Positions 449 through 9,070 of a stretch of 9,212 bases of DNA are shown piece after piece. Both the position numbers and the translations under genes were made by a program. The stretch spans positions 1 through 9,212 of the IMG/VR virus record IMGVR_UViG_3300005859_000239, one strand, 5' to 3'. The notes under the pieces are model-generated. The model saw nothing but the letters and a program-made list of their open reading frames with translations. It had not been told where the DNA came from and did no database searches. Within the stretch, counting starts at the first letter, position 1; every line of letters starts with the position of its first letter.

Positions 449-1969
449 ATGGAAAGATTGTTAGATAATTTAGAACATTATATTCCGAAAATAGAGAAAC
501 TAATATTAGAAAAAGAAAAAGGAGGAAGAAAAAGAGAAATAAGCTTACATAGATGGTGGTCCAAAAGATTTATTTATTTATATAGAAGTATTCTCTCATC
601 TTTTCTATTAAATGAAGATAATAAATTTTTTGAAGCTGTTGAAAATCCAGAATTGTTAGATGCAGATAAACAAATTTATTTAGAACCGATGGCCGGAGGC
701 GGAACTGGTATCGTTGAAGCTTCGTTATATAATTTTATTGCTTACGGCATAGATATTAATCCATTAGCAGTAAGAATAATTCATGGTTATTCAGTATTAC
801 GCAATAATGTTGATTTTAACAAAATAATATCTGTAGTTGAAGAAGTAAAAAATGAATTAAGTCAGATTTGGACCTATAAAGGACAAGAAATTTCTTATTT
901 CTTCATTACAAGAGAAAAAGTTCCATCTTGGATAATGTCGCATGGAAGGAAGAAGATAATTCTTTGTCCGAATTGCGGAAGAACATTTTGTACAAAGAAT
1001 TCAGATAAAGTTGAATGTCCTTATTGTAATTACGATATACAAATTACTATAAAACCTATTTATGAACCAAAAAATTTTGTTACTTATTCAAATTGGAAAG
1101 TTTTCGGATTTATTGTAAATAAAAAATTTATGTTTGACAGGGATTGGTTAATTGAAAGAAACAAATTAATGAATATAAATTTACATATTGATATAGATGT
1201 TAATATAAAAGAATTAAAAGAAGGCAAAAGATTATTACAAATTGGAATTTCTGAACCTGAACAATTATTTACAAAAGCTCAATTGCTTACTTTTCAAAAA
1301 ATTGCTGAAAAATCTAAAAAACTTGGAGAAGATGAGAGATTGCTTTTAATGTTAGCCGTCAGTGATTCTGTGAAAACCTGCAGTGTTCTGTCAAAATGGT
1401 ATCCGTTACAAAATGAACCAGTAATCTATGGTGGAGGAGTTAAAGGATTTTGGGTACCTGAATATACTGTGGAAACAAATCCATTAGCTCTACATGCCAG
1501 AAGTACAATATTTTCTAACATTAAAAATCAGCAACTTATAAAGAAATTTAATTTCAGAGGAGAAATAAATGTGATTCAAGGAGATGCTTTAACTATAAAT
1601 TATCCAAAAAGCGATTTAATAGTTTTAGATCCTCCATATTACAAAATTGCCCCAAGTTATGCTTCTTTAAGTTTTCCTCATATTGTGATAGCTAATTTGT
1701 TTGAAAAAATATCACTAAGAGAATCATTAAACAAAGAGATTAATAATACTGACTATTTTGAAAAAATTCTTAAAATTTTAATTAAAAGCAAACAAGCATT
1801 AAAAGATAATGGAAGAATTGTATTAATGATTAATACGAATATATCTAATGAAATTATAGAAAAATCTGGACTTGACATTATAAATAGATATGAAATACTA
1901 GGCGAATCACCTGGTAAACTAGGTAGATCCGAAAATAGAAAAATTAATCTTATTATTTTAGGGAAATAG
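449..1969 (+). CDS. DNA amino-methyltransferase (probably N6-adenine) with Zn-ribbon, DUF1156/COG1743-like, 506 aa
   Basis: N-terminal LHRWWSKR (DUF1156-type LHxWWxRR). SAM-binding motif LEPMAGGGT...GIDINP, Zn ribbon CPNC...CPYC, LFTKAQLL and ETNP segments, and catalytic DPPY near the C-terminus (motif I before motif IV). Confidence 0.88.
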   Translation: MERLLDNLEHYIPKIEKLILEKEKGGRKREISLHRWWSKRFIYLYRSILSSFLLNEDNKFFEAVENPELLDADKQIYLEPMAGGGTGIVEASLYNFIAYGIDINPLAVRIIHGYSVLRNNVDFNKIISVVEEVKNELSQIWTYKGQEISYFFITREKVPSWIMSHGRKKIILCPNCGRTFCTKNSDKVECPYCNYDIQITIKPIYEPKNFVTYSNWKVFGFIVNKKFMFDRDWLIERNKLMNINLHIDIDVNIKELKEGKRLLQIGISEPEQLFTKAQLLTFQKIAEKSKKLGEDERLLLMLAVSDSVKTCSVLSKWYPLQNEPVIYGGGVKGFWVPEYTVETNPLALHARSTIFSNIKNQQLIKKFNFRGEINVIQGDALTINYPKSDLIVLDPPYYKIAPSYASLSFPHIVIANLFEKISLRESLNKEINNTDYFEKILKILIKSKQALKDNGRIVLMINTNISNEIIEKSGLDIINRYEILGESPGKLGRSENRKINLIILGK

Positions 1970-2926: not shown

Positions 2927-2976
2927 CTATTTTGTAAACGTATATCATTAATATTTTTAGATGAGTCAGAGAAACA

Positions 2977-2990
2977 GACTTTTAAATGTC
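2977..2990. promoter_or_regulatory. TATA box flanked by inverted GTC (GAC-TTTTAAAT-GTC), possible bidirectional promoter
   Basis: Reads TTTTAAATGTC on + (18 nt before ATG 3009) and ATTTAAAAGTC on - (towards the GNAT gene). Confidence 0.6.
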
Positions 2991-3008
2991 ATTCTAGATT
3001 TTCATTTT

Positions 3009-3311
3009 ATGAGTAAGCGAATAGCTATTTACATGAAAAGAGAGGAAAAGCAAATGTTGAAATTCTATGCTTCTCAATTAGGAATGTCAATTTCAGAATT
3101 TATAAGATTTTTAATTAAGGAGTTCTCAGCTGAAGATTTAAAATATTTTGAAACTAGATATAAACCAGATTTAGAGTTTTTAGTTACAGTTGATGAAGCA
3201 ATTCTAAAAAAGTTGGAAGATATGGAGATAAAATTACTAAGACCGCGGTCAACTATTGTGAGGGCTATGATATTGACTTTATCGCAAAATGTCGAGCAAA
3301 ACTCGACATGA
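3009..3311 (+). CDS. Tandem ribbon-helix-helix DNA-binding protein, 100 aa
   Basis: Two RHH units: KRIAIYM..EEKQML..YA..LGMSISEFIRFLI and FLVTVDEAILKKLE......PRSTIVRAMI. The start is moved from 2961 to ATG 3009 because the promoter element lies at 2980-2990. Confidence 0.85.
   Translation: MSKRIAIYMKREEKQMLKFYASQLGMSISEFIRFLIKEFSAEDLKYFETRYKPDLEFLVTVDEAILKKLEDMEIKLLRPRSTIVRAMILTLSQNVEQNST
3289..3309. repeat. Perfect 8-bp inverted repeat ATGTCGAG-CAAAA-CTCGACAT
   Basis: Read directly; it lies 36 nt upstream of the 466-aa gene. Confidence 0.75.
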
Positions 3312-3345: not shown

Positions 3346-4746
3346 ATGACTAGGAAGAAAGGGCATAGATCAATCGCACAAATGAAGTATCACCTTTACG
3401 AGAAGGTGCTTTATCGCAAATCATTCCCCGCGTTTTCGGAAATGTTTAACGCTGGAGTTGAGTCAGTTTTACCAACTCCGCTTGTGAACATCCACGTTCC
3501 TAAAGGATTAAACACTAACTACGGGATTGCTTACGCTTCAATTATTTCATCTCTTCTCTCTGCTCTTAATAATTTAGCAATTTCAAAATTTAATCCGGAT
3601 TTTAATAGCTTGCCAAATTTACAACTTGGAGGAAGTTTATTCTTCGGACAAACTTCTGGAGTTGATTTTGTAAATCAATATTCACAATTGTATGATGATT
3701 ATGTTGATCTTTGTTCAATTTTGTATCAACCTGCTATTTTTGATGAGACTTACTTTGATCTTTCAGTTTATCAACCTGCAAATACTATTGAGAATAGGAA
3801 TGAAGCTTGTAAGAAAATTGAACAATATTTTAACAGTTTGACAACTTCAAATATTAGCATTAACTTGCAAAATTTAGGAGTTGGAATTACTAATATCCCA
3901 AGTGTTGATAATTATTCATTTTCTAATTTGCAAAATACCGGAATTGGAGATTTATTAAGCTCATTAAATATTAATTATAATCAACTTCCAGATTTAGCTA
4001 AATTTATAGTTGCATTTATTCCGAATTTAAATGATATTATCAATAGCGGATTTGCTTTAGATGTCGGATGGCTCGATAGATGTGTTTTACCGATAGAAAT
4101 TGAAAATAGTCAAGGGTATAAAGTTCAACTTGAGAATGGAATGATTTTACAGAATTTTGCAGATGTTTTTGGAATGATATTGGATTATACGCCATTAGAT
4201 TTTGCTATTTTAATTCCAGAATTTAATCCACAAAGTGTTAATGAATTAGATTTAGTTGCAATTTTAACCGCTGATAAAACTGTAATTTCAATATTTGGTA
4301 GCTTATTTAAAGCTCATCTTTATGACCCTTCTCCAGGTGGCGAAAATATAACTTATAGCTCAGAAATTGAAAATTATGCAGTCTCATACGAGCAATTTTT
4401 ACAAGTTCAAAGAATTGTAAATCAAAGATATTCAAACATTTGGTATGCTAAAATGATAGCTTCAGCAATTTTAGAAATTGCAAGATATCCTTATCAACAA
4501 AACTATAGCTACAATAGCGGAAAAAGAACATTGTCATATAATGATTTCTTAAATTATTGGAGAACAAAATGGAAATTCTACGGAGTTTCAGATGCAGATT
4601 TAGAATTTGCTAAACAATTTGGCGAACAAATGCAAGGACAAGCTAAAGTTGAGAATAGGCTCAAATTGTCTCAGAAAGGAGCTAAAGCTAAGCAATACAA
4701 ATCAATTTTCTATTACAAAAACTTTAAAAATATTGCAGAAAGATAG
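3346..4746 (+). CDS. Minor virion structural protein (SIRV2 ORF488-like), 466 aa
   Basis: N-terminus RKKGHRSIAQMKYHLYEK, size, and synteny between the ORF154-like and ORF110-like genes. Confidence 0.8.
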   Translation: MTRKKGHRSIAQMKYHLYEKVLYRKSFPAFSEMFNAGVESVLPTPLVNIHVPKGLNTNYGIAYASIISSLLSALNNLAISKFNPDFNSLPNLQLGGSLFFGQTSGVDFVNQYSQLYDDYVDLCSILYQPAIFDETYFDLSVYQPANTIENRNEACKKIEQYFNSLTTSNISINLQNLGVGITNIPSVDNYSFSNLQNTGIGDLLSSLNINYNQLPDLAKFIVAFIPNLNDIINSGFALDVGWLDRCVLPIEIENSQGYKVQLENGMILQNFADVFGMILDYTPLDFAILIPEFNPQSVNELDLVAILTADKTVISIFGSLFKAHLYDPSPGGENITYSSEIENYAVSYEQFLQVQRIVNQRYSNIWYAKMIASAILEIARYPYQQNYSYNSGKRTLSYNDFLNYWRTKWKFYGVSDADLEFAKQFGEQMQGQAKVENRLKLSQKGAKAKQYKSIFYYKNFKNIAER

Positions 4747-4928: not shown

Positions 4929-5153
4929 TCAAACTGCTAAGTAAACTTTCTTTTTTAGTCTTCCAGTTTCTTGATTTTTTTCCCAAATAATCTTTACTAG
5001 TCCTTTTTTCTCAAGCGTTTTTATTCTTTTATGCATAACTATTTTATAGCCGACTGTATGAGAAAATGTATTTTGCAATTTATCTAACCATTCTGATCCT
5101 CCATTTTCTTTGAGATATTCTAAAATTTTTTGTTCTTCTTTACCTATTCTCAT
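4929..5153 (-). CDS. Winged helix-turn-helix protein, 74 aa
   Basis: QKILEYLKENG...IKTLEKKGLVKI...GRLKKKVYL wHTH pattern; GATATTTGTC element 19 nt upstream (GAC at 5173-5175). Confidence 0.85.
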   Translation of the reverse strand: MRIGKEEQKILEYLKENGGSEWLDKLQNTFSHTVGYKIVMHKRIKTLEKKGLVKIIWEKNQETGRLKKKVYLAV

Positions 5154-5291
5154 AATTTTAAATTAAGTTTATGACAAATATCAATTTACTTTATTCTAAT
5201 TACTCAATTAGCTCAACTAATATTCCTCATATCATAAATATGGCAAATTTGCTTTGAGTTTATTTATTTTAGTTTTGTGAAATAATCATTC

Positions 5292-5654
5292 ATGCAGGTT
5301 CAAGACCCATTTGCAAATATTTTCGGTCCCGTGAGAATTGCAATTGATAAAATTAGAGAATTAGAATTACATGGTCAAATTTATGGACTTAGTAAATACT
5401 TGCCTAACTCTGTAATTGTTTTGAAAAATTCAGAGTTGCCAATGATTGTAGATTTATATGTTCCCGGATTTACATTTTATTTTGAATTTTTAATTGCAAA
5501 AGATCCGAAAACTAACATAATTGCAATTGCAGACTTTAGAGTTGTATATCCACAACCTTACGCTAAACAAATTGATTCAGTTTATCAAACATTCAAAGAA
5601 AAAGAAAATTTGAATTTTGATAATTTAGAAGAAGAAACAGGTGAGGAAGAATGA
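5292..5654 (+). CDS. Conserved rudiviral protein (SIRV2 ORF110-like) with acidic tail, 120 aa
   Basis: Clean ORF, AT-rich TATA-like sequence near 5259-5270, synteny. Confidence 0.75.
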   Translation: MQVQDPFANIFGPVRIAIDKIRELELHGQIYGLSKYLPNSVIVLKNSELPMIVDLYVPGFTFYFEFLIAKDPKTNIIAIADFRVVYPQPYAKQIDSVYQTFKEKENLNFDNLEEETGEEE

Positions 5655-6006: not shown

Positions 6007-6060
6007 TGTTTTCGAATGTTTTATATTTGTCATATTACAAATTTTTATATAGATGAGATA

Positions 6061-6267
6061 ATGACAGATGAAACAAGATATATAAAAATTAAATTATTGT
6101 CTAAATGGTTAAATGATATATCTAAGGAAATTGTAAATAATAAAACTTTAGATGATGAAGATTTAATAGGCTTGTTAATGAGTATGAAAAATACAATTTC
6201 AGAACTTGACAAAGAAATAGAAATTATGATAGGCGAAATTACAAAAAATAAAAAAAGTCAAAAATAG
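6061..6267 (+). CDS. Hypothetical helical protein, 68 aa (probable paralogue of 7093..7275)
   Basis: The start is moved from 6016 to 6061 because TTTATATTTGTC (6020-6031) lies inside the extension. Confidence 0.75.
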   Translation: MTDETRYIKIKLLSKWLNDISKEIVNNKTLDDEDLIGLLMSMKNTISELDKEIEIMIGEITKNKKSQK

Positions 6268-6589: not shown

Positions 6590-6607
6590 ATTAAAAGAAA
6601 AAAAGAA

Positions 6608-6907
6608 TTATAACTTTTTAATATATTCTTTAATTTGAGATATTTCTTCACTTCTCAGATTCAAATTAGGATCATATAAAATCTTTGTATTTCCTGCTTC
6701 TTTCGCTAAAATTGCAAGATCTCTTTCAAGCAATAATTTTCTTGTAGGATTGAGATGATGAAGTACAAGATGAGATGATAAATGTTCTGTGTACATTCCA
6801 CAAATTGGACATCTGTAGTCCTTATAATGAACAAACATGTGTTTTATATATTGTTTTCTAATTGTAAATATTTGTTTGCAGATAGGACAATAATAATGTC
6901 TTGGCAT
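6608..6907 (-). CDS. Double C2H2 zinc-finger protein, copy A, 99 aa
   Basis: CPIC-x12-H-x3-H and CPIC-x9-H-x4-H; SD-like AGGTGA upstream. Confidence 0.9.
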   Translation of the reverse strand: MPRHYYCPICKQIFTIRKQYIKHMFVHYKDYRCPICGMYTEHLSSHLVLHHLNPTRKLLLERDLAILAKEAGNTKILYDPNLNLRSEEISQIKEYIKKL

Positions 6908-7036
6908 TTACTCAATCACCTTGACTTCTAAACCAAAATCTTTGCACATCTTTATGATATTTTTAGCTAACTTATCATCTTGTCTTTTGACATGGAATCT
7001 TGTAAGATTTGAACATTCTATTATGATCTCTTCCAT
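6908..7036 (-). CDS. Small protein not in the ORF track, 42 aa (MEEIIIECSNLTRFHVKRQDDKLAKNIIKMCKDFGLEVKVIE); in-frame upstream ATGs at 7060 and 7069
   Basis: GGTGA 4 nt before the ATG, stop abutting the next ATG (TAA-ATG), and BRE/TATA-like GAAAAATTTATA upstream at 7069-7080. Confidence 0.7.
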   Translation of the reverse strand: MEEIIIECSNLTRFHVKRQDDKLAKNIIKMCKDFGLEVKVIE

Positions 7037-7092
7037 ACTTTCACCATATTTATATCTCATTTTAAGCATATAAATTTTTCGGTTTATCGATT

Positions 7093-7275
7093 CTAAGATT
7101 TGTCAATTATTGTTGTTATTTTATTATTAATTTCATTAGATATGCTTTTCACAGCTAATAATAAATTTTTTACCTCATCATCAGAAAGATTAGAATTTGT
7201 TATTATTTCATTTAATAATTTGCATTCTATTTTTGCAAGCTCATTTAATGTTAATAAATCCATTTTGTTTACCAT
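7093..7275 (-). CDS. Hypothetical helical protein, 60 aa (probable paralogue of 6061..6267)
   Basis: SD GGTGA at 7281-7285; follows zinc-finger copy B on the same strand. Confidence 0.75.
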   Translation of the reverse strand: MVNKMDLLTLNELAKIECKLLNEIITNSNLSDDEVKNLLLAVKSISNEINNKITTIIDKS

Positions 7276-7291
7276 TTAATTCACCAAGAAA

Positions 7292-7591
7292 TTATAATTT
7301 TTTCAAAAGTCTGGTTATTACTATCTTATCCGATTTTCCTAAATTAAGATCTTTATCATATAAAATTTTCGTATCTCCAGATTCTTTACATAAAATTGCC
7401 AAATCTCTTCTATATATTGCATTTTTTCTATAATACAGATGATAATATACAAAATGTTCTATGAATCTTGTGGTTTTCATGCCACAATATGGACATTCTT
7501 TTCCATTAAAATGTTTTAATGCATGTTTCTTAATTTCTTTTCTTCCATAAATTGTACTTTTGCAAATATAACAATAAAATTTTTGTGCCAT
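7292..7591 (-). CDS. Double C2H2 zinc-finger protein, copy B, 99 aa
   Basis: CYIC-x12-H-x3-H and CPYC-x9-H-x4-H; gap-free alignment to 6608..6907. Confidence 0.9.
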   Translation of the reverse strand: MAQKFYCYICKSTIYGRKEIKKHALKHFNGKECPYCGMKTTRFIEHFVYYHLYYRKNAIYRRDLAILCKESGDTKILYDKDLNLGKSDKIVITRLLKKL

Positions 7592-7602: not shown

Positions 7603-7845
7603 TTAATCATTATCATTTGGAATTAATAAGTAAAAATAATCTTTTTCTTTTGCGATAACTTTCCTAAGTCCTATAAATCTATGAAAATAAAATTCATAAC
7701 CAAATTTTTCAATTTTGAGATGTTCACAAGATCCAAATTTTATAACTTTATCATTTTCAATTTCTGCTAACATTTTATTACATTTACTACAAAAATATTG
7801 AATTTTGTTTCCATTTTTAATTTCTATTAATCTAAGTTCTTCCAT
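7603..7845 (-). CDS. Small putative Zn-binding protein (CxxC...CxH), 80 aa
   Basis: YFCSKC...GSCEH. ATG 7845 is preferred to GTG 7854, which is probably part of an SD-like AGTGA. Confidence 0.75.
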   Translation of the reverse strand: MEELRLIEIKNGNKIQYFCSKCNKMLAEIENDKVIKFGSCEHLKIEKFGYEFYFHRFIGLRKVIAKEKDYFYLLIPNDND

Positions 7846-7855
7846 ATCAATCACT

Positions 7856-8863
7856 TTATTCTAAAAATCTAACATATAAATTCTCAATGTCATATTTCTT
7901 TGCCAATTCTCTTAAATTTTTACTTCTTTCTTCTCTATCTTTTAATTCTGTAGCTATCATAATTGCAGATATCATATCTTGAATATCAAATTTATGAATT
8001 TTCCAAGTTTGTCCGTGGTCTTTATCGTAATAAGTCTCAACTTCTGAAGATTTAATCAAAAGATTCCATTGCCAAGATGTAAATTCATCAAATGGTGGAA
8101 TTAATTGATGAATTACCGGCGTTCCCATAGCCATTGATTCAAGGACTGGTAAACCAAAACCTTCAGTTCCAGAAGGTACAATAATGTAGTCCATGACTTT
8201 ATAAAATGCAAATATATATTCTCTTTGATTTAACCCAAATTCTGCTACAAAATGAACATTTTCCGGAACTTCAAAATCTCTAAATGCCTTATGCGAAATT
8301 ATGAAAAAATGGACTTTTTTTGCTAAATCTGGAAATTTAGAATTCAAAGTTTGAAAGACTTTAATCATTAAATCCATATTTTTTCTTTTTGTTAATCCTG
8401 AAACAATTCCGAATTTTATGGAATCTGGAAAATCTTTGTCTAACTTTTGTTTTAATTGTGGAGCTAATTGTTCAGCTTTTTCAACAATTTCAAAATTGAT
8501 CCCATGAAATACCGGCAAGTCAGTTTGTAAACCTACTTCTTGTAAATTTTCAGCTGAAAACTTTGAGTTTGGTATAAATATTATGTCTTTTAACAAATAT
8601 TGATTTACAATATTCAAATTTGGAATTCCGTCACATGTAGTATAAAAATACTTGATGCCGTGGAATTCTCGGAAAGTGTATAAGTAGGGATTTAAAGAAG
8701 GCGGATGAAAAGGCATAAATACAATTAACTTTTCTGACTTTGGAATTAAATAAGGATTTGTTGAAATTGTTACAGTTTCTCCATTTTTTCTCAAAACGTA
8801 AGCTATATCTTCCGAAACATTACGGATAGATGAATAATTCATAGTTAGAATTACGGTTTTCAT
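7856..8863 (-). CDS. GT4 (GT-B) glycosyltransferase, SIRV2 ORF335-like
   Basis: KRKN and PSGTEGFGLPVLESMAMGTPVI (E-x7-E) motifs; 335 aa; located near the capsid gene. Confidence 0.93.
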   Translation of the reverse strand: MKTVILTMNYSSIRNVSEDIAYVLRKNGETVTISTNPYLIPKSEKLIVFMPFHPPSLNPYLYTFREFHGIKYFYTTCDGIPNLNIVNQYLLKDIIFIPNSKFSAENLQEVGLQTDLPVFHGINFEIVEKAEQLAPQLKQKLDKDFPDSIKFGIVSGLTKRKNMDLMIKVFQTLNSKFPDLAKKVHFFIISHKAFRDFEVPENVHFVAEFGLNQREYIFAFYKVMDYIIVPSGTEGFGLPVLESMAMGTPVIHQLIPPFDEFTSWQWNLLIKSSEVETYYDKDHGQTWKIHKFDIQDMISAIMIATELKDREERSKNLRELAKKYDIENLYVRFLE

Positions 8864-8899
8864 GAGATTTTTTTAAATGTCATGACATTAAAAAATCAT
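8864..8899. promoter_or_regulatory. Overlapping palindromic divergent promoters
   Basis: Perfect 14-bp palindrome AATGTCATGACATT (8876-8889) flanked by T and A tracts, giving a TATA-GTC element on each strand. Confidence 0.75.
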
Positions 8900-9070
8900 A
8901 TGAAGTTATTGCTTTACGAATGTCCAGTTTGCGGAAAAATATGTAAAAGTAAATGGAGTATGAAAGATCATCTCGAAAGATATCATAAAGGCATAACAAT
9001 TAGAGATTGCAAACGAATAAGTGCAAAAACTGGAGAATATATAGAAACAAAAATTGATGATAATGAATAA
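8900..9070 (+). CDS. Single C2H2 zinc-finger protein (SIRV2 ORF55-like), 56 aa
   Basis: YECPVCG...MKDHLERYH. ATG 8900 is preferred because ATG 8882 is the centre of the promoter palindrome. Confidence 0.85.
   Translation: MKLLLYECPVCGKICKSKWSMKDHLERYHKGITIRDCKRISAKTGEYIETKIDDNE

What the first reader, a model, noticed from the sequence alone, without database searches (positions are those of the whole stretch)
6608..7591. Diverged duplicate double-C2H2 proteins with a conserved unknown C-terminal domain
Both are exactly 99 aa and align without gaps at 43/99 identity. The finger residues between the Zn ligands have diverged, while RDLAILxKExGxTKILYDxxLNL is 18/23 identical. This fits a variable recognition module with a constant effector or dimerisation domain, such as heterodimeric or specificity-diversified viral regulators or host-factor adaptors.
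Basis: partly seen in the sequence, partly recalled or inferred. Interest (0 to 1): 0.6.

Follow-up and report, generated by a model that had tools for sequence, protein, structure and literature searches.

The report
Paralogous rudivirus two-zinc-finger proteins
Two real, intact, diverged copies of a small zinc-finger gene sit in one operon of a hot-spring archaeal rod-shaped virus; the family is already catalogued, has no known function, probably binds DNA, and has been copied repeatedly in related viruses.

Summary
Window 6608-6907(-) and 7292-7591(-) encode two 99-aa proteins that align without gaps at 43/99 identity (E 3e-27), with an 18/23 identical motif at residues 62-84. The window is a fragment of a Yellowstone-type rudivirus (Usarudivirus-like). 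Both proteins are full-length members of PHROG 12334 (unknown function), which SIRV4-11 carry as a single copy.

The N-terminal half holds one classical C2H2 finger and one shortened CCHH finger. The C-terminal half is a small three-helix unit with no Pfam, PDB or fold match. A search of 1.84 billion protein representatives found it only in this one architecture.

- Identity between the copies is about equal in both halves (21/52 and 22/47).
- Conservation is concentrated in an invariant RDLAILxKE helix, and the last 15 residues are the most diverged.
- Among orthologues the finger half is the more constrained one (omega 0.21 against 0.36).

The duplication is old and is conserved in a second contig. 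Relatives carry independent tandem arrays of 2-3 copies. The most likely function is a small basic nucleic-acid-binding regulator, which is inferred and not shown. Dimerisation is untested and no RNA data exist. Interest is modest.

The parts
6608..6907 (-). Copy A (ZnF-A), 99 aa, last gene of the operon. Finger 1 lies at 6827-6889, finger 2 at 6755-6811, the conserved motif (residues 62-84) at 6656-6724.
   Evidence: ORF. Full-length match to phrog_12334, E 3e-24. An orthologue in L008 is 74% identical over 99 columns, with omega 0.18. AF2 model pLDDT 93.6, pTM 0.77.
7292..7591 (-). Copy B (ZnF-B), 99 aa. Finger 1 lies at 7511-7573, finger 2 at 7439-7495, the conserved motif (residues 62-84) at 7340-7408.
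   Evidence: ORF. phrog_12334, E 1e-32. 51-53% identical to the single copy of SIRV4-11. Orthologue in L008 is 79% identical, omega 0.27. AF2 model pLDDT 82.
6908..7069 (-). ORF53 (phrog_12004). Its stop codon abuts the ATG of copy A. It is the usual upstream neighbour of the zinc-finger gene in relatives.
   Evidence: Gene maps of 20 loci. Sequence.
7093..7275 (-). ORF60 (phrog_10862, cluster c1), lying between the two copies. A second, distant c1 member lies at 6016-6267(+).
7603..7854 (-). ORF83 (phrog_19843), a small CxxC...CxH protein between the glycosyltransferase and copy B.
7856..8863 (-). Group-1 glycosyltransferase, 335 aa, first gene of the tightly packed six-gene block. It is a rudivirus core gene.
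   Evidence: Pfam Glycos_transf_1, E 1e-12. 57-87% identical in 42 rudivirus records.
6916..6920 (-). GGTGA Shine-Dalgarno-like motif 8 nt upstream of the ATG of copy A. A matching GGTGA lies at 7281-7285 before ORF60.
   Evidence: Read directly from the sequence. The assignment as a Sulfolobales ribosome-binding motif rests on general knowledge.
6593..6607 (-). T-rich tract (TTCTTTTTTTCTTTT) directly after the stop codon of copy A, a likely archaeal terminator closing the operon.
   Evidence: Read directly from the sequence. Function is inferred.

Best explanation
The two ORFs are functional paralogues of a small, basic protein family (pI 9.3-9.8) that is specific to Yellowstone-type rudiviruses (Usarudivirus and metagenomic kin). 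Each protein is predicted to be one compact body. It contains a classical C2H2 finger, a shortened CCHH finger joined by a 5-residue linker, and a three-helix C-terminal unit. The first of those helices carries the invariant RDLAILxKE sequence. I infer that the protein binds nucleic acid, most likely viral or host DNA, as a transcription regulator or architectural factor. Binding would run through finger 1, whose helix keeps K11, K18, K21 and K22. The helical unit would brace the fingers and offer a second conserved surface. The genes lie in a variable slot downstream of the core glycosyltransferase. In the window they are co-transcribed in a six-gene block (GT, ORF83, ZnF-B, ORF60, ORF53, ZnF-A). 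The slot gains copies repeatedly: two separated copies here and in one other contig, and tandem doublets and a triplet elsewhere. This suggests paralogues take on different targets. Shown: homology, architecture, distribution, purifying selection, copy-number variation. Inferred: zinc binding, DNA binding, the regulatory role, co-transcription.
For: The rudivirus context and synteny with SIRV4-11 come.

Family-wide invariance covers all eight zinc ligands, P34 and L64/A65/L67/E70/L77. R62/D63/I66/K69/I76 are at 90% or more.

The N-terminal half is homologous to tandem C2H2 fingers: PDB profile search, ZBTB20 E 5.5e-7 and CTCF 8e-6. zf-Di19 matches 12 of 36 members, best E 4e-6. Finger 1 superposes on solved C2H2 fingers (2els, 1.0 A over 30 columns).

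The compact fold has pLDDT 93.6 and pTM 0.77. The family is basic, median pI 9.8.

Purifying selection acts on both copies and on both halves.

The same two-copy order occurs in NCBI contig LAFT01000075, locus L008. L020 has three tandem copies, and L026 and L027 have two each.

Gene spacing is 0-23 nt, with GGTGA motifs and a T-tract after copy A.

AFV1p06 is so far the only characterised archaeal-virus C2H2 protein, and it binds DNA (PMC3541406).
Against: There is no experimental datum for any member of the family. No RNA run holds the sequence, so expression is inferred only from selection and operon signals.

The window copies fall below the Pfam gathering scores.

The predicted compact packing and the 5-residue linker differ from DNA-wrapping tandem fingers: superpositions on DNA-bound arrays give about 10 A rmsd. 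Canonical major-groove reading by both fingers is therefore doubtful.

C2H2 fingers also bind RNA and proteins.

The gene sits among structural and late-type genes, not among known early regulators.
Confidence: 0.5

Rival explanations
1. The family is a protein-protein adaptor or anti-defence / host-takeover factor. The invariant charged face of the RDLAILxKE helix would bind a host protein. Copy-number expansion would reflect an arms race with the host.
For: The gene is confined to one geographic lineage and counts as variable relative to SIRV1/2 (PMC5454432). Amplification to 2-3 copies is recurrent. Polar residues R62, D63, K69 and E70 are as invariant as the zinc ligands. The predicted compact fold is unlike DNA-wrapping finger arrays.
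Against: The SIRV9 and SIRV10 orthologues and their upstream neighbours are absent from the held supplementary lists of the regulatory-motif screen for archaeal anti-defence genes. The gene lies in the central block, not at the genome termini where rudiviral anti-CRISPR genes cluster (general knowledge; PMC5454432). All parts are under purifying selection with no sign of diversifying selection. PADLOC hits are weak and driven by the Cys pattern.
Confidence: 0.2
2. The two copies form an obligate A/B heterodimer, or homodimers, through the conserved C-terminal helix. This would double the DNA site that is read.
For: The most conserved segment is shared almost unchanged by both copies (18/23). 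The pattern R-D...K-E is self-complementary for an antiparallel helix pair (read from the sequence; inference). Both genes are in one operon.
Against: Most relatives have one copy only, so a heterodimer cannot be the ancestral mode. AlphaFold packs this helix into the monomer's own core at high confidence. No computation here supports an interface.
Confidence: 0.15
3. The CxxC...H...CxxC...H pattern is a degenerate zinc-braced HNH (beta-beta-alpha-metal) nuclease and not a pair of fingers.
For: Weak matches to HNH models: phrog_8048 E 0.0014, phrog_1271 and phrog_2255; retron HNH TIGR02646 E 0.016; PtuB E 0.007.
Against: No conserved Asn or Asp-His: positions 29-31 vary across K, D, N, G, E and Y. 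Residue 37, directly after the second CxxC, is N or G. Finger 1 has exact classical spacing and the classical hydrophobic positions. Profile hits to true C2H2 arrays are far stronger. AF2 gives two beta-beta-alpha units.
Confidence: 0.03
4. One copy is a decaying, non-functional duplicate.
For: Copy A has the longer branch (0.25 against 0.07) and scores lower against the PHROG model.
Against: Both copies are intact, keep all eight ligands and the invariant helix, have orthologues in L008 with omega 0.18 (A) and 0.27 (B), and carry ribosome-binding motifs.
Confidence: 0.05

Closest known systems
PHROG 12334 / SIRV4-11 'hypothetical protein' (e.g. SIRV10 ORF22, YP_009362806; UniProt A0A1X9SJT7, 'C2H2-type domain-containing protein')
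   Same: Same family, same length and same architecture. The slot downstream of the glycosyltransferase is the same. Identity is 45-53%.
   Different: Those isolates carry one copy. The window carries two, separated by two small genes. No member has a known function.
Classical eukaryote-type C2H2 zinc fingers (Pfam PF00096; ZBTB20, CTCF, Zif268)
   Same: Finger 1 has the exact Y-x-C-x2-C-x3-hydrophobic-x5-hydrophobic-x2-H-x3-H pattern and the beta-beta-alpha fold. Profile matches cover positions 3-51.
   Different: Finger 2 has a 9-residue Cys-His spacer and H-x4-H. The linker between the fingers is 5 residues, not the TGEKP-type 7. The fingers are predicted to pack with a helical extension and not to form a flexible array.
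zf-Di19 (Pfam PF05605), the two atypical C2H2 fingers of plant Di19 DNA-binding proteins
   Same: This is the best Pfam match across the family. It spans both fingers as one 54-position unit (residues 4-51 to profile 2-53).
   Different: The window copies are sub-threshold (20.6 and 15.7 bits against a cut-off of 27.5). There is no Di19 C-terminal region, and no evolutionary link has been shown.
AFV1p06 (Acidianus filamentous virus 1 gp06), the characterised archaeal-virus C2H2 DNA-binding protein (PMC3541406)
   Same: A small archaeal-virus protein with a eukaryote-type finger plus a family-specific structural extension. It binds DNA in EMSA.
   Different: It has one finger with a Glu as fourth ligand, a beta-strand extension, and disordered termini. 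It belongs to a different family and did not appear among the PDB profile hits.
Neighbouring rudiviral single-finger protein (window ORF62, 8882-9070; phrog_6283; SIRV2 ORF55 position)
   Same: A C2H2 finger protein in the same gene block. Copy A's finger 1 matches phrog_6283 at E 6e-6. hhalign of ORF62 against the family gives E 3.5e-4.
   Different: It has one finger, no helical C-terminal unit, and the gene block carrying it is present across Rudiviridae, including Icelandic SIRV2.

Membership tests
PHROG 12334 (rudiviral 99-aa protein family) | Full-length match to the family HMM | tested here: met
   Copy B E 1.2e-32, residues 1-99 to profile 1-99. Copy A E 3.1e-24, residues 1-99 to profile 1-99.
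PHROG 12334 (rudiviral 99-aa protein family) | Rudivirus genome context downstream of the core glycosyltransferase | tested here: met
   Gene maps of the window and 19 related loci. SIRV9 and SIRV10 annotation.
Classical C2H2 zinc finger (PF00096) | C-x2-4-C-x12-H-x3-5-H spacing with conserved hydrophobic positions | tested here: met
   Finger 1 is C7-x2-C10-x12-H23-x3-H27, with I/F14 and I/F/Y20 conserved. Finger 2 does not meet it (x9 spacer).
Classical C2H2 zinc finger (PF00096) | Score at or above Pfam's gathering threshold | tested here: not met
   Copy A scores 20.1 bits against a cut-off of 25.2. Copy B has no PF00096 hit at E 1 or below. The family profile nevertheless hits solved C2H2 arrays at E 5.5e-7.
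Classical C2H2 zinc finger (PF00096) | Beta-beta-alpha fold around the metal site | tested here: met
   AF2 secondary structure. Superposition on 2els gives 1.0 A over 30 columns, on 2emb 1.1 A over 27. This is a predicted model only.
Classical C2H2 zinc finger (PF00096) | Zinc binding and nucleic-acid binding | not testable with these tools
   Needs metal analysis and EMSA on purified protein.
zf-Di19 (PF05605) | Two-finger unit scoring above the gathering threshold | tested here: not met
   Copy A scores 20.6 bits and copy B 15.7 bits against 27.5. 12 of 36 relatives match at E 0.01 or below, best 4.4e-6.
HNH / beta-beta-alpha-metal nuclease | Conserved catalytic His (usually D/H-H), Asn and metal-binding His/Asn between and after two CxxC pairs | tested here: not met
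   No conserved Asn. Positions 29-31 and 37 vary. Only weak HMM hits.
Helix-turn-helix / Myb-like tri-helical DNA-binding domain (considered for residues 55-99) | Significant structural or sequence match to an HTH family | tested here: inconclusive
   The best hits are generic three-helix matches: Z 5.7 (TadD), 4.3 (R2 N-terminal region), 3.7 (DeoR N-terminal domain). The list is flat down to Z 3.6. No Pfam or PDB sequence hit.
Archaeal-virus anti-defence gene families (Aca8-regulon screen, PMC11065993) | Listed among the 116 ADG families | tested here: not met
   The accessions of the SIRV9 and SIRV10 orthologues and of their upstream neighbours do not occur in the 9 held supplementary files. 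The held text may be incomplete.

The most novel reading that the evidence does not exclude
The family could be an undescribed fold type: a C2H2 finger pair fused into one compact body with a three-helix unit that carries an invariant charged helix (RDLAILxKE). It occurs nowhere else among 1.84 billion protein representatives. Its repeated amplification (1, 2 or 3 copies in a single slot of North American rudiviruses) could mark it as a host-interaction or counter-defence factor and not a plain transcription factor.
Probability: 0.15. Interest if true: 0.55.

Novelty: new member of a known kind. Interest (0 to 1): 0.3.

Why it matters
C2H2 fingers are rare outside eukaryotes, and only one archaeal-virus finger protein (AFV1p06) has been studied. 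This family offers a compact, confidently modelled, thermostable two-finger protein with a private helical extension. It also shows natural copy-number variation in viruses (SIRV4-11) that grow on a genetically tractable host. It is a convenient test case for how archaeal viruses use eukaryote-type fingers, and for whether gene amplification in the rudiviral variable slot tracks host interaction. As it stands, this is an annotation-level refinement of a catalogued hypothetical family and not a surprise.

Tried and rejected
- **Complex prediction of copy A with copy B:** no verdict (score 0.02, mark 0.32). This is not evidence for or against binding.
- **ESM Atlas feature search with residues 53-99:** no usable hit.
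- **Atlas shape search:** only finger-type rows, all with TM under 0.5.
- **Sequencing-run search:** one DNA metagenome run, probably the source sample, and no RNA. Expression could not be tested and read laying was not used.
- **HNH-nuclease reading:** rejected, because no catalytic residues are conserved.
- **Canonical HTH reading of LAILxKExG:** not supported. The hydrophobic positions after the Gly do not fit, the 'recognition' helix would be 4 residues long, and fold matches are generic.
- **SIRV2 ORF156, which occupies the same slot:** unrelated (hhalign probability 0.15%).
- **DNA-level repeats between the copies or candidate operator repeats:** nothing beyond AT-rich noise.
- **Recent in-genome duplication:** the ML tree puts copy B with the single-copy SIRV-type genes (97/96 support) and copy A outside. 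The AU test does not reject A+B as one clade (p 0.144). Only the minimum age is settled: the duplication is older than the window/L008 split.
- **Literature searches for rudiviral C2H2 proteins:** no study of this family was found.
- It was redone by reading /data/window.fa.

Full report
**What the window is.** The 9212-base window is an IMG/VR virus record, about 30% complete, with roughly 27% G+C. Its genes are those of a rod-shaped virus of Sulfolobales. They include an Hjc resolvase (11-379), a group-1 glycosyltransferase (7856-8863) and an RHH protein (2961-3311), plus a 466-aa protein (3346-4746) shared with SIRV-like genomes. The glycosyltransferase region is about 80% identical in DNA to SIRV4, SIRV8, SIRV9 and three further Yellowstone isolates. 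Gene order matches Usarudivirus genomes in inverted orientation.

**Checking the observation.**
- ORFs at 6608-6907(-) (copy A) and 7292-7591(-) (copy B) are both 99 aa.
- They align end to end without gaps at 43/99 identity, E 3e-27.
- Residues 62-84 are 18/23 identical. A window that rich arises in only 0.4% of shuffles of the identity pattern.
- The two halves are otherwise equally similar: 21/52 for residues 1-52 and 22/47 for residues 53-99.
- The last 15 residues are the most diverged part, at 4/15.
- Synonymous sites inside the motif are as diverged as elsewhere (pS 0.57). The motif is therefore held by selection on the protein and not by recent gene conversion.
- No DNA repeat links the two genes.

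**Anatomy of the protein.** A 36-member alignment shows these invariant residues: C7, C10, H23, H27, C33, P34, H46, H51, L64, A65, L67, E70 and L77. C36, K11, M38, R62, D63, I66, K69 and I76 are at 90% or more.
- Finger 1 is a textbook C2H2 finger (C-x2-C-x12-H-x3-H) with both conserved hydrophobic positions. Its helix keeps basic residues at 18, 21 and 22.
- Finger 2 is shortened (C-x2-C-x9-H-x4-H) and follows a 5-residue linker. Two relatives carry an 8-residue insertion in that linker.
- Pfam gives only sub-threshold finger hits for the window copies. Across the family the best model is zf-Di19, which spans both fingers (12 of 36 members, best E 4e-6).
- A family profile finds solved tandem C2H2 arrays (ZBTB20 E 5.5e-7, CTCF 8e-6) over positions 3-51 and nothing for the C-terminal half.
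- AlphaFold2 with the deep alignment gives copy A a pLDDT of 93.6 and pTM of 0.77. It shows two beta-beta-alpha units followed by helices 56-71, 75-78 and 86-98. Copy B with a shallower alignment gives the same secondary structure (pLDDT 82).
- Single fingers superpose on solved C2H2 fingers (1.0 A over 30 columns). Superposition on DNA-bound arrays gives about 10 A, which fits a compact arrangement and not beads on a string.

**The C-terminal unit.**
- Residues 53-99 have no Pfam hit and no PDB sequence hit beyond an 18-residue chance match to Spy.
- They have no Atlas look-alike.
- Structurally there are only generic three-helix matches, Z 5.7 or below, with a flat list down to Z 3.6.
- A profile of this part was scored against 1.84 billion cluster representatives. 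It found seven proteins: five full-length relatives of 99-105 aa with the same architecture or fragments of such proteins, one further 51-aa fragment, and one spurious repeat protein.
It is not a mobile module, because it exists only fused to these two fingers.

**Distribution and history.**
- The neighbouring glycosyltransferase occurs in 42 phage-collection records covering all rudivirus genera.
- The finger protein occurs in only the 19 Yellowstone SIRV records, once each. Icelandic SIRV2 has an unrelated ORF156 in that slot.
- A scan of IMG/VR gave 20 loci. Most have one copy, usually directly after a phrog_12004 gene.
- L020 has three tandem copies, and L026 and L027 have two each.
- NCBI contig LAFT01000075 (L008) repeats the window's exact order, GT, ZnF-B, c1, phrog_12004, ZnF-A. 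Its A and B orthologues are 74% and 79% identical to the window's.
- In the maximum-likelihood tree, copy B nests with the single-copy SIRV-type genes (support 97/96) and copy A lies outside that group.
- The AU test does not reject A and B forming one clade (p 0.144). The duplication is therefore at least as old as the window/L008 split, and its exact origin stays open.
- The window also holds two members of the flanking c1 family. This fits duplication or recombination of a small module and not of the finger gene alone.

**Selection.**
- Nei-Gojobori estimates for orthologues give omega 0.18 for A and 0.27 for B. For B both halves give the same value.
- Pooled over 46 orthologous pairs, omega is 0.21 for the finger half and 0.36 for the C-terminal half.
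- Column entropy tells the same story: 1.37 against 1.50, with the minimum in residues 62-77 (0.75) and the maximum in residues 85-99 (2.02).
- The fingers are therefore not a fast-evolving recognition module set against a constant effector domain.

**Expression signals.**
- GT, ORF83, ZnF-B, ORF60, ORF53 and ZnF-A follow each other with gaps of 0-23 nt on one strand.
- GGTGA motifs precede ORF60 and ZnF-A, and a T-rich tract follows ZnF-A.
- Only one DNA metagenome run holds the sequence and no RNA run does. Expression therefore remains inferred.

**Most likely function.** The proteins are basic (pI 9.3-9.8) and carry a canonical finger with conserved lysines. They belong to the class for which the one studied archaeal-virus example binds DNA (PMC3541406). 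I take them to be small nucleic-acid-binding regulators or architectural factors (confidence about 0.5). Paralogues probably differ in target.

The rivals are:
- a protein-binding or counter-defence role (0.2). The orthologues are not in the held lists of the Aca8-based anti-defence screen;
- dimerisation through the conserved helix (0.15). The single complex job gave no verdict;
- a degenerate HNH nuclease (0.03);
- one dead copy (0.05).

**Verdict.** The family is already catalogued (PHROG 12334; hypothetical or 'C2H2-type domain-containing' proteins of SIRV4-11), so this is a new member of a known kind. What is added here:
- the two-copy state and its conservation in a second contig;
- tandem arrays in relatives;
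- the exclusive finger-plus-helix architecture;
- a confident compact model;
- the finding that the finger half is the more constrained one.

Noticed in passing
L020:3983-5008 (IMGVR_UViG_3300026885_000015); L026:3623-4300; L027:1829-2506: Related rudivirus contigs carry the zinc-finger gene as a tandem triplet (L020) or doublet (L026, L027). These copies have a short extra N-terminal 'GxxKG' extension (105-113 aa) and lack the phrog_12004 upstream gene.
   Followed up: partly
window 6908-7069 (-): ORF53 (phrog_12004, 41-53 aa in relatives) directly precedes the zinc-finger gene in most loci, here with stop and start abutting. The conserved pair hints at a functional couple. It has no Pfam hit.
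   Followed up: partly
window 7603-7854 (-) and 8882-9070 (+): Two more small putative zinc-binding proteins flank the glycosyltransferase: ORF83 (CxxC...CxH, phrog_19843) and ORF62 (single C2H2 finger, phrog_6283). That makes four such genes within 2.5 kb.
   Followed up: partly
window 7093-7275 (-) and 6016-6267 (+): There are two distant members (27% identity, E 0.02) of the same small helical family (cluster c1, phrog_10862), one next to each finger copy. This suggests a module was duplicated or recombined, not a single gene.
   Followed up: partly
window 449-1969 (+): A 506-aa ORF with a weak DNA-methylase match (N6_N4_Mtase, E 2.6e-4, sub-threshold) and an internal CxxC...CxxC stretch. 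It lies next to the Hjc resolvase gene (11-379).
   Followed up: no
P0004 and P0009 (metagenomic relatives of copy B): An 8-residue insertion sits exactly in the linker between the two fingers. This shows the linker tolerates length change although the fold is predicted to be compact.
   Followed up: no
P0018 and P0022 (from the exhaustive search): P0018 has Tyr in place of the fourth Cys (C36). P0022 is a 51-aa protein that keeps only the C-terminal unit after an unrelated N-terminus. Both may be decaying copies or assembly or gene-calling artefacts.
   Followed up: no
L003 (SIRV9, NC_034620) 5001-5300: RefSeq annotates the SIRV9 orthologue as a 62-aa ORF28 (locus 5112-5300). This misses the first finger, although the full 99-aa frame is open from 5001. 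L008's copy A was likewise called as 88 aa. Public gene calls truncate this family.
   Followed up: partly
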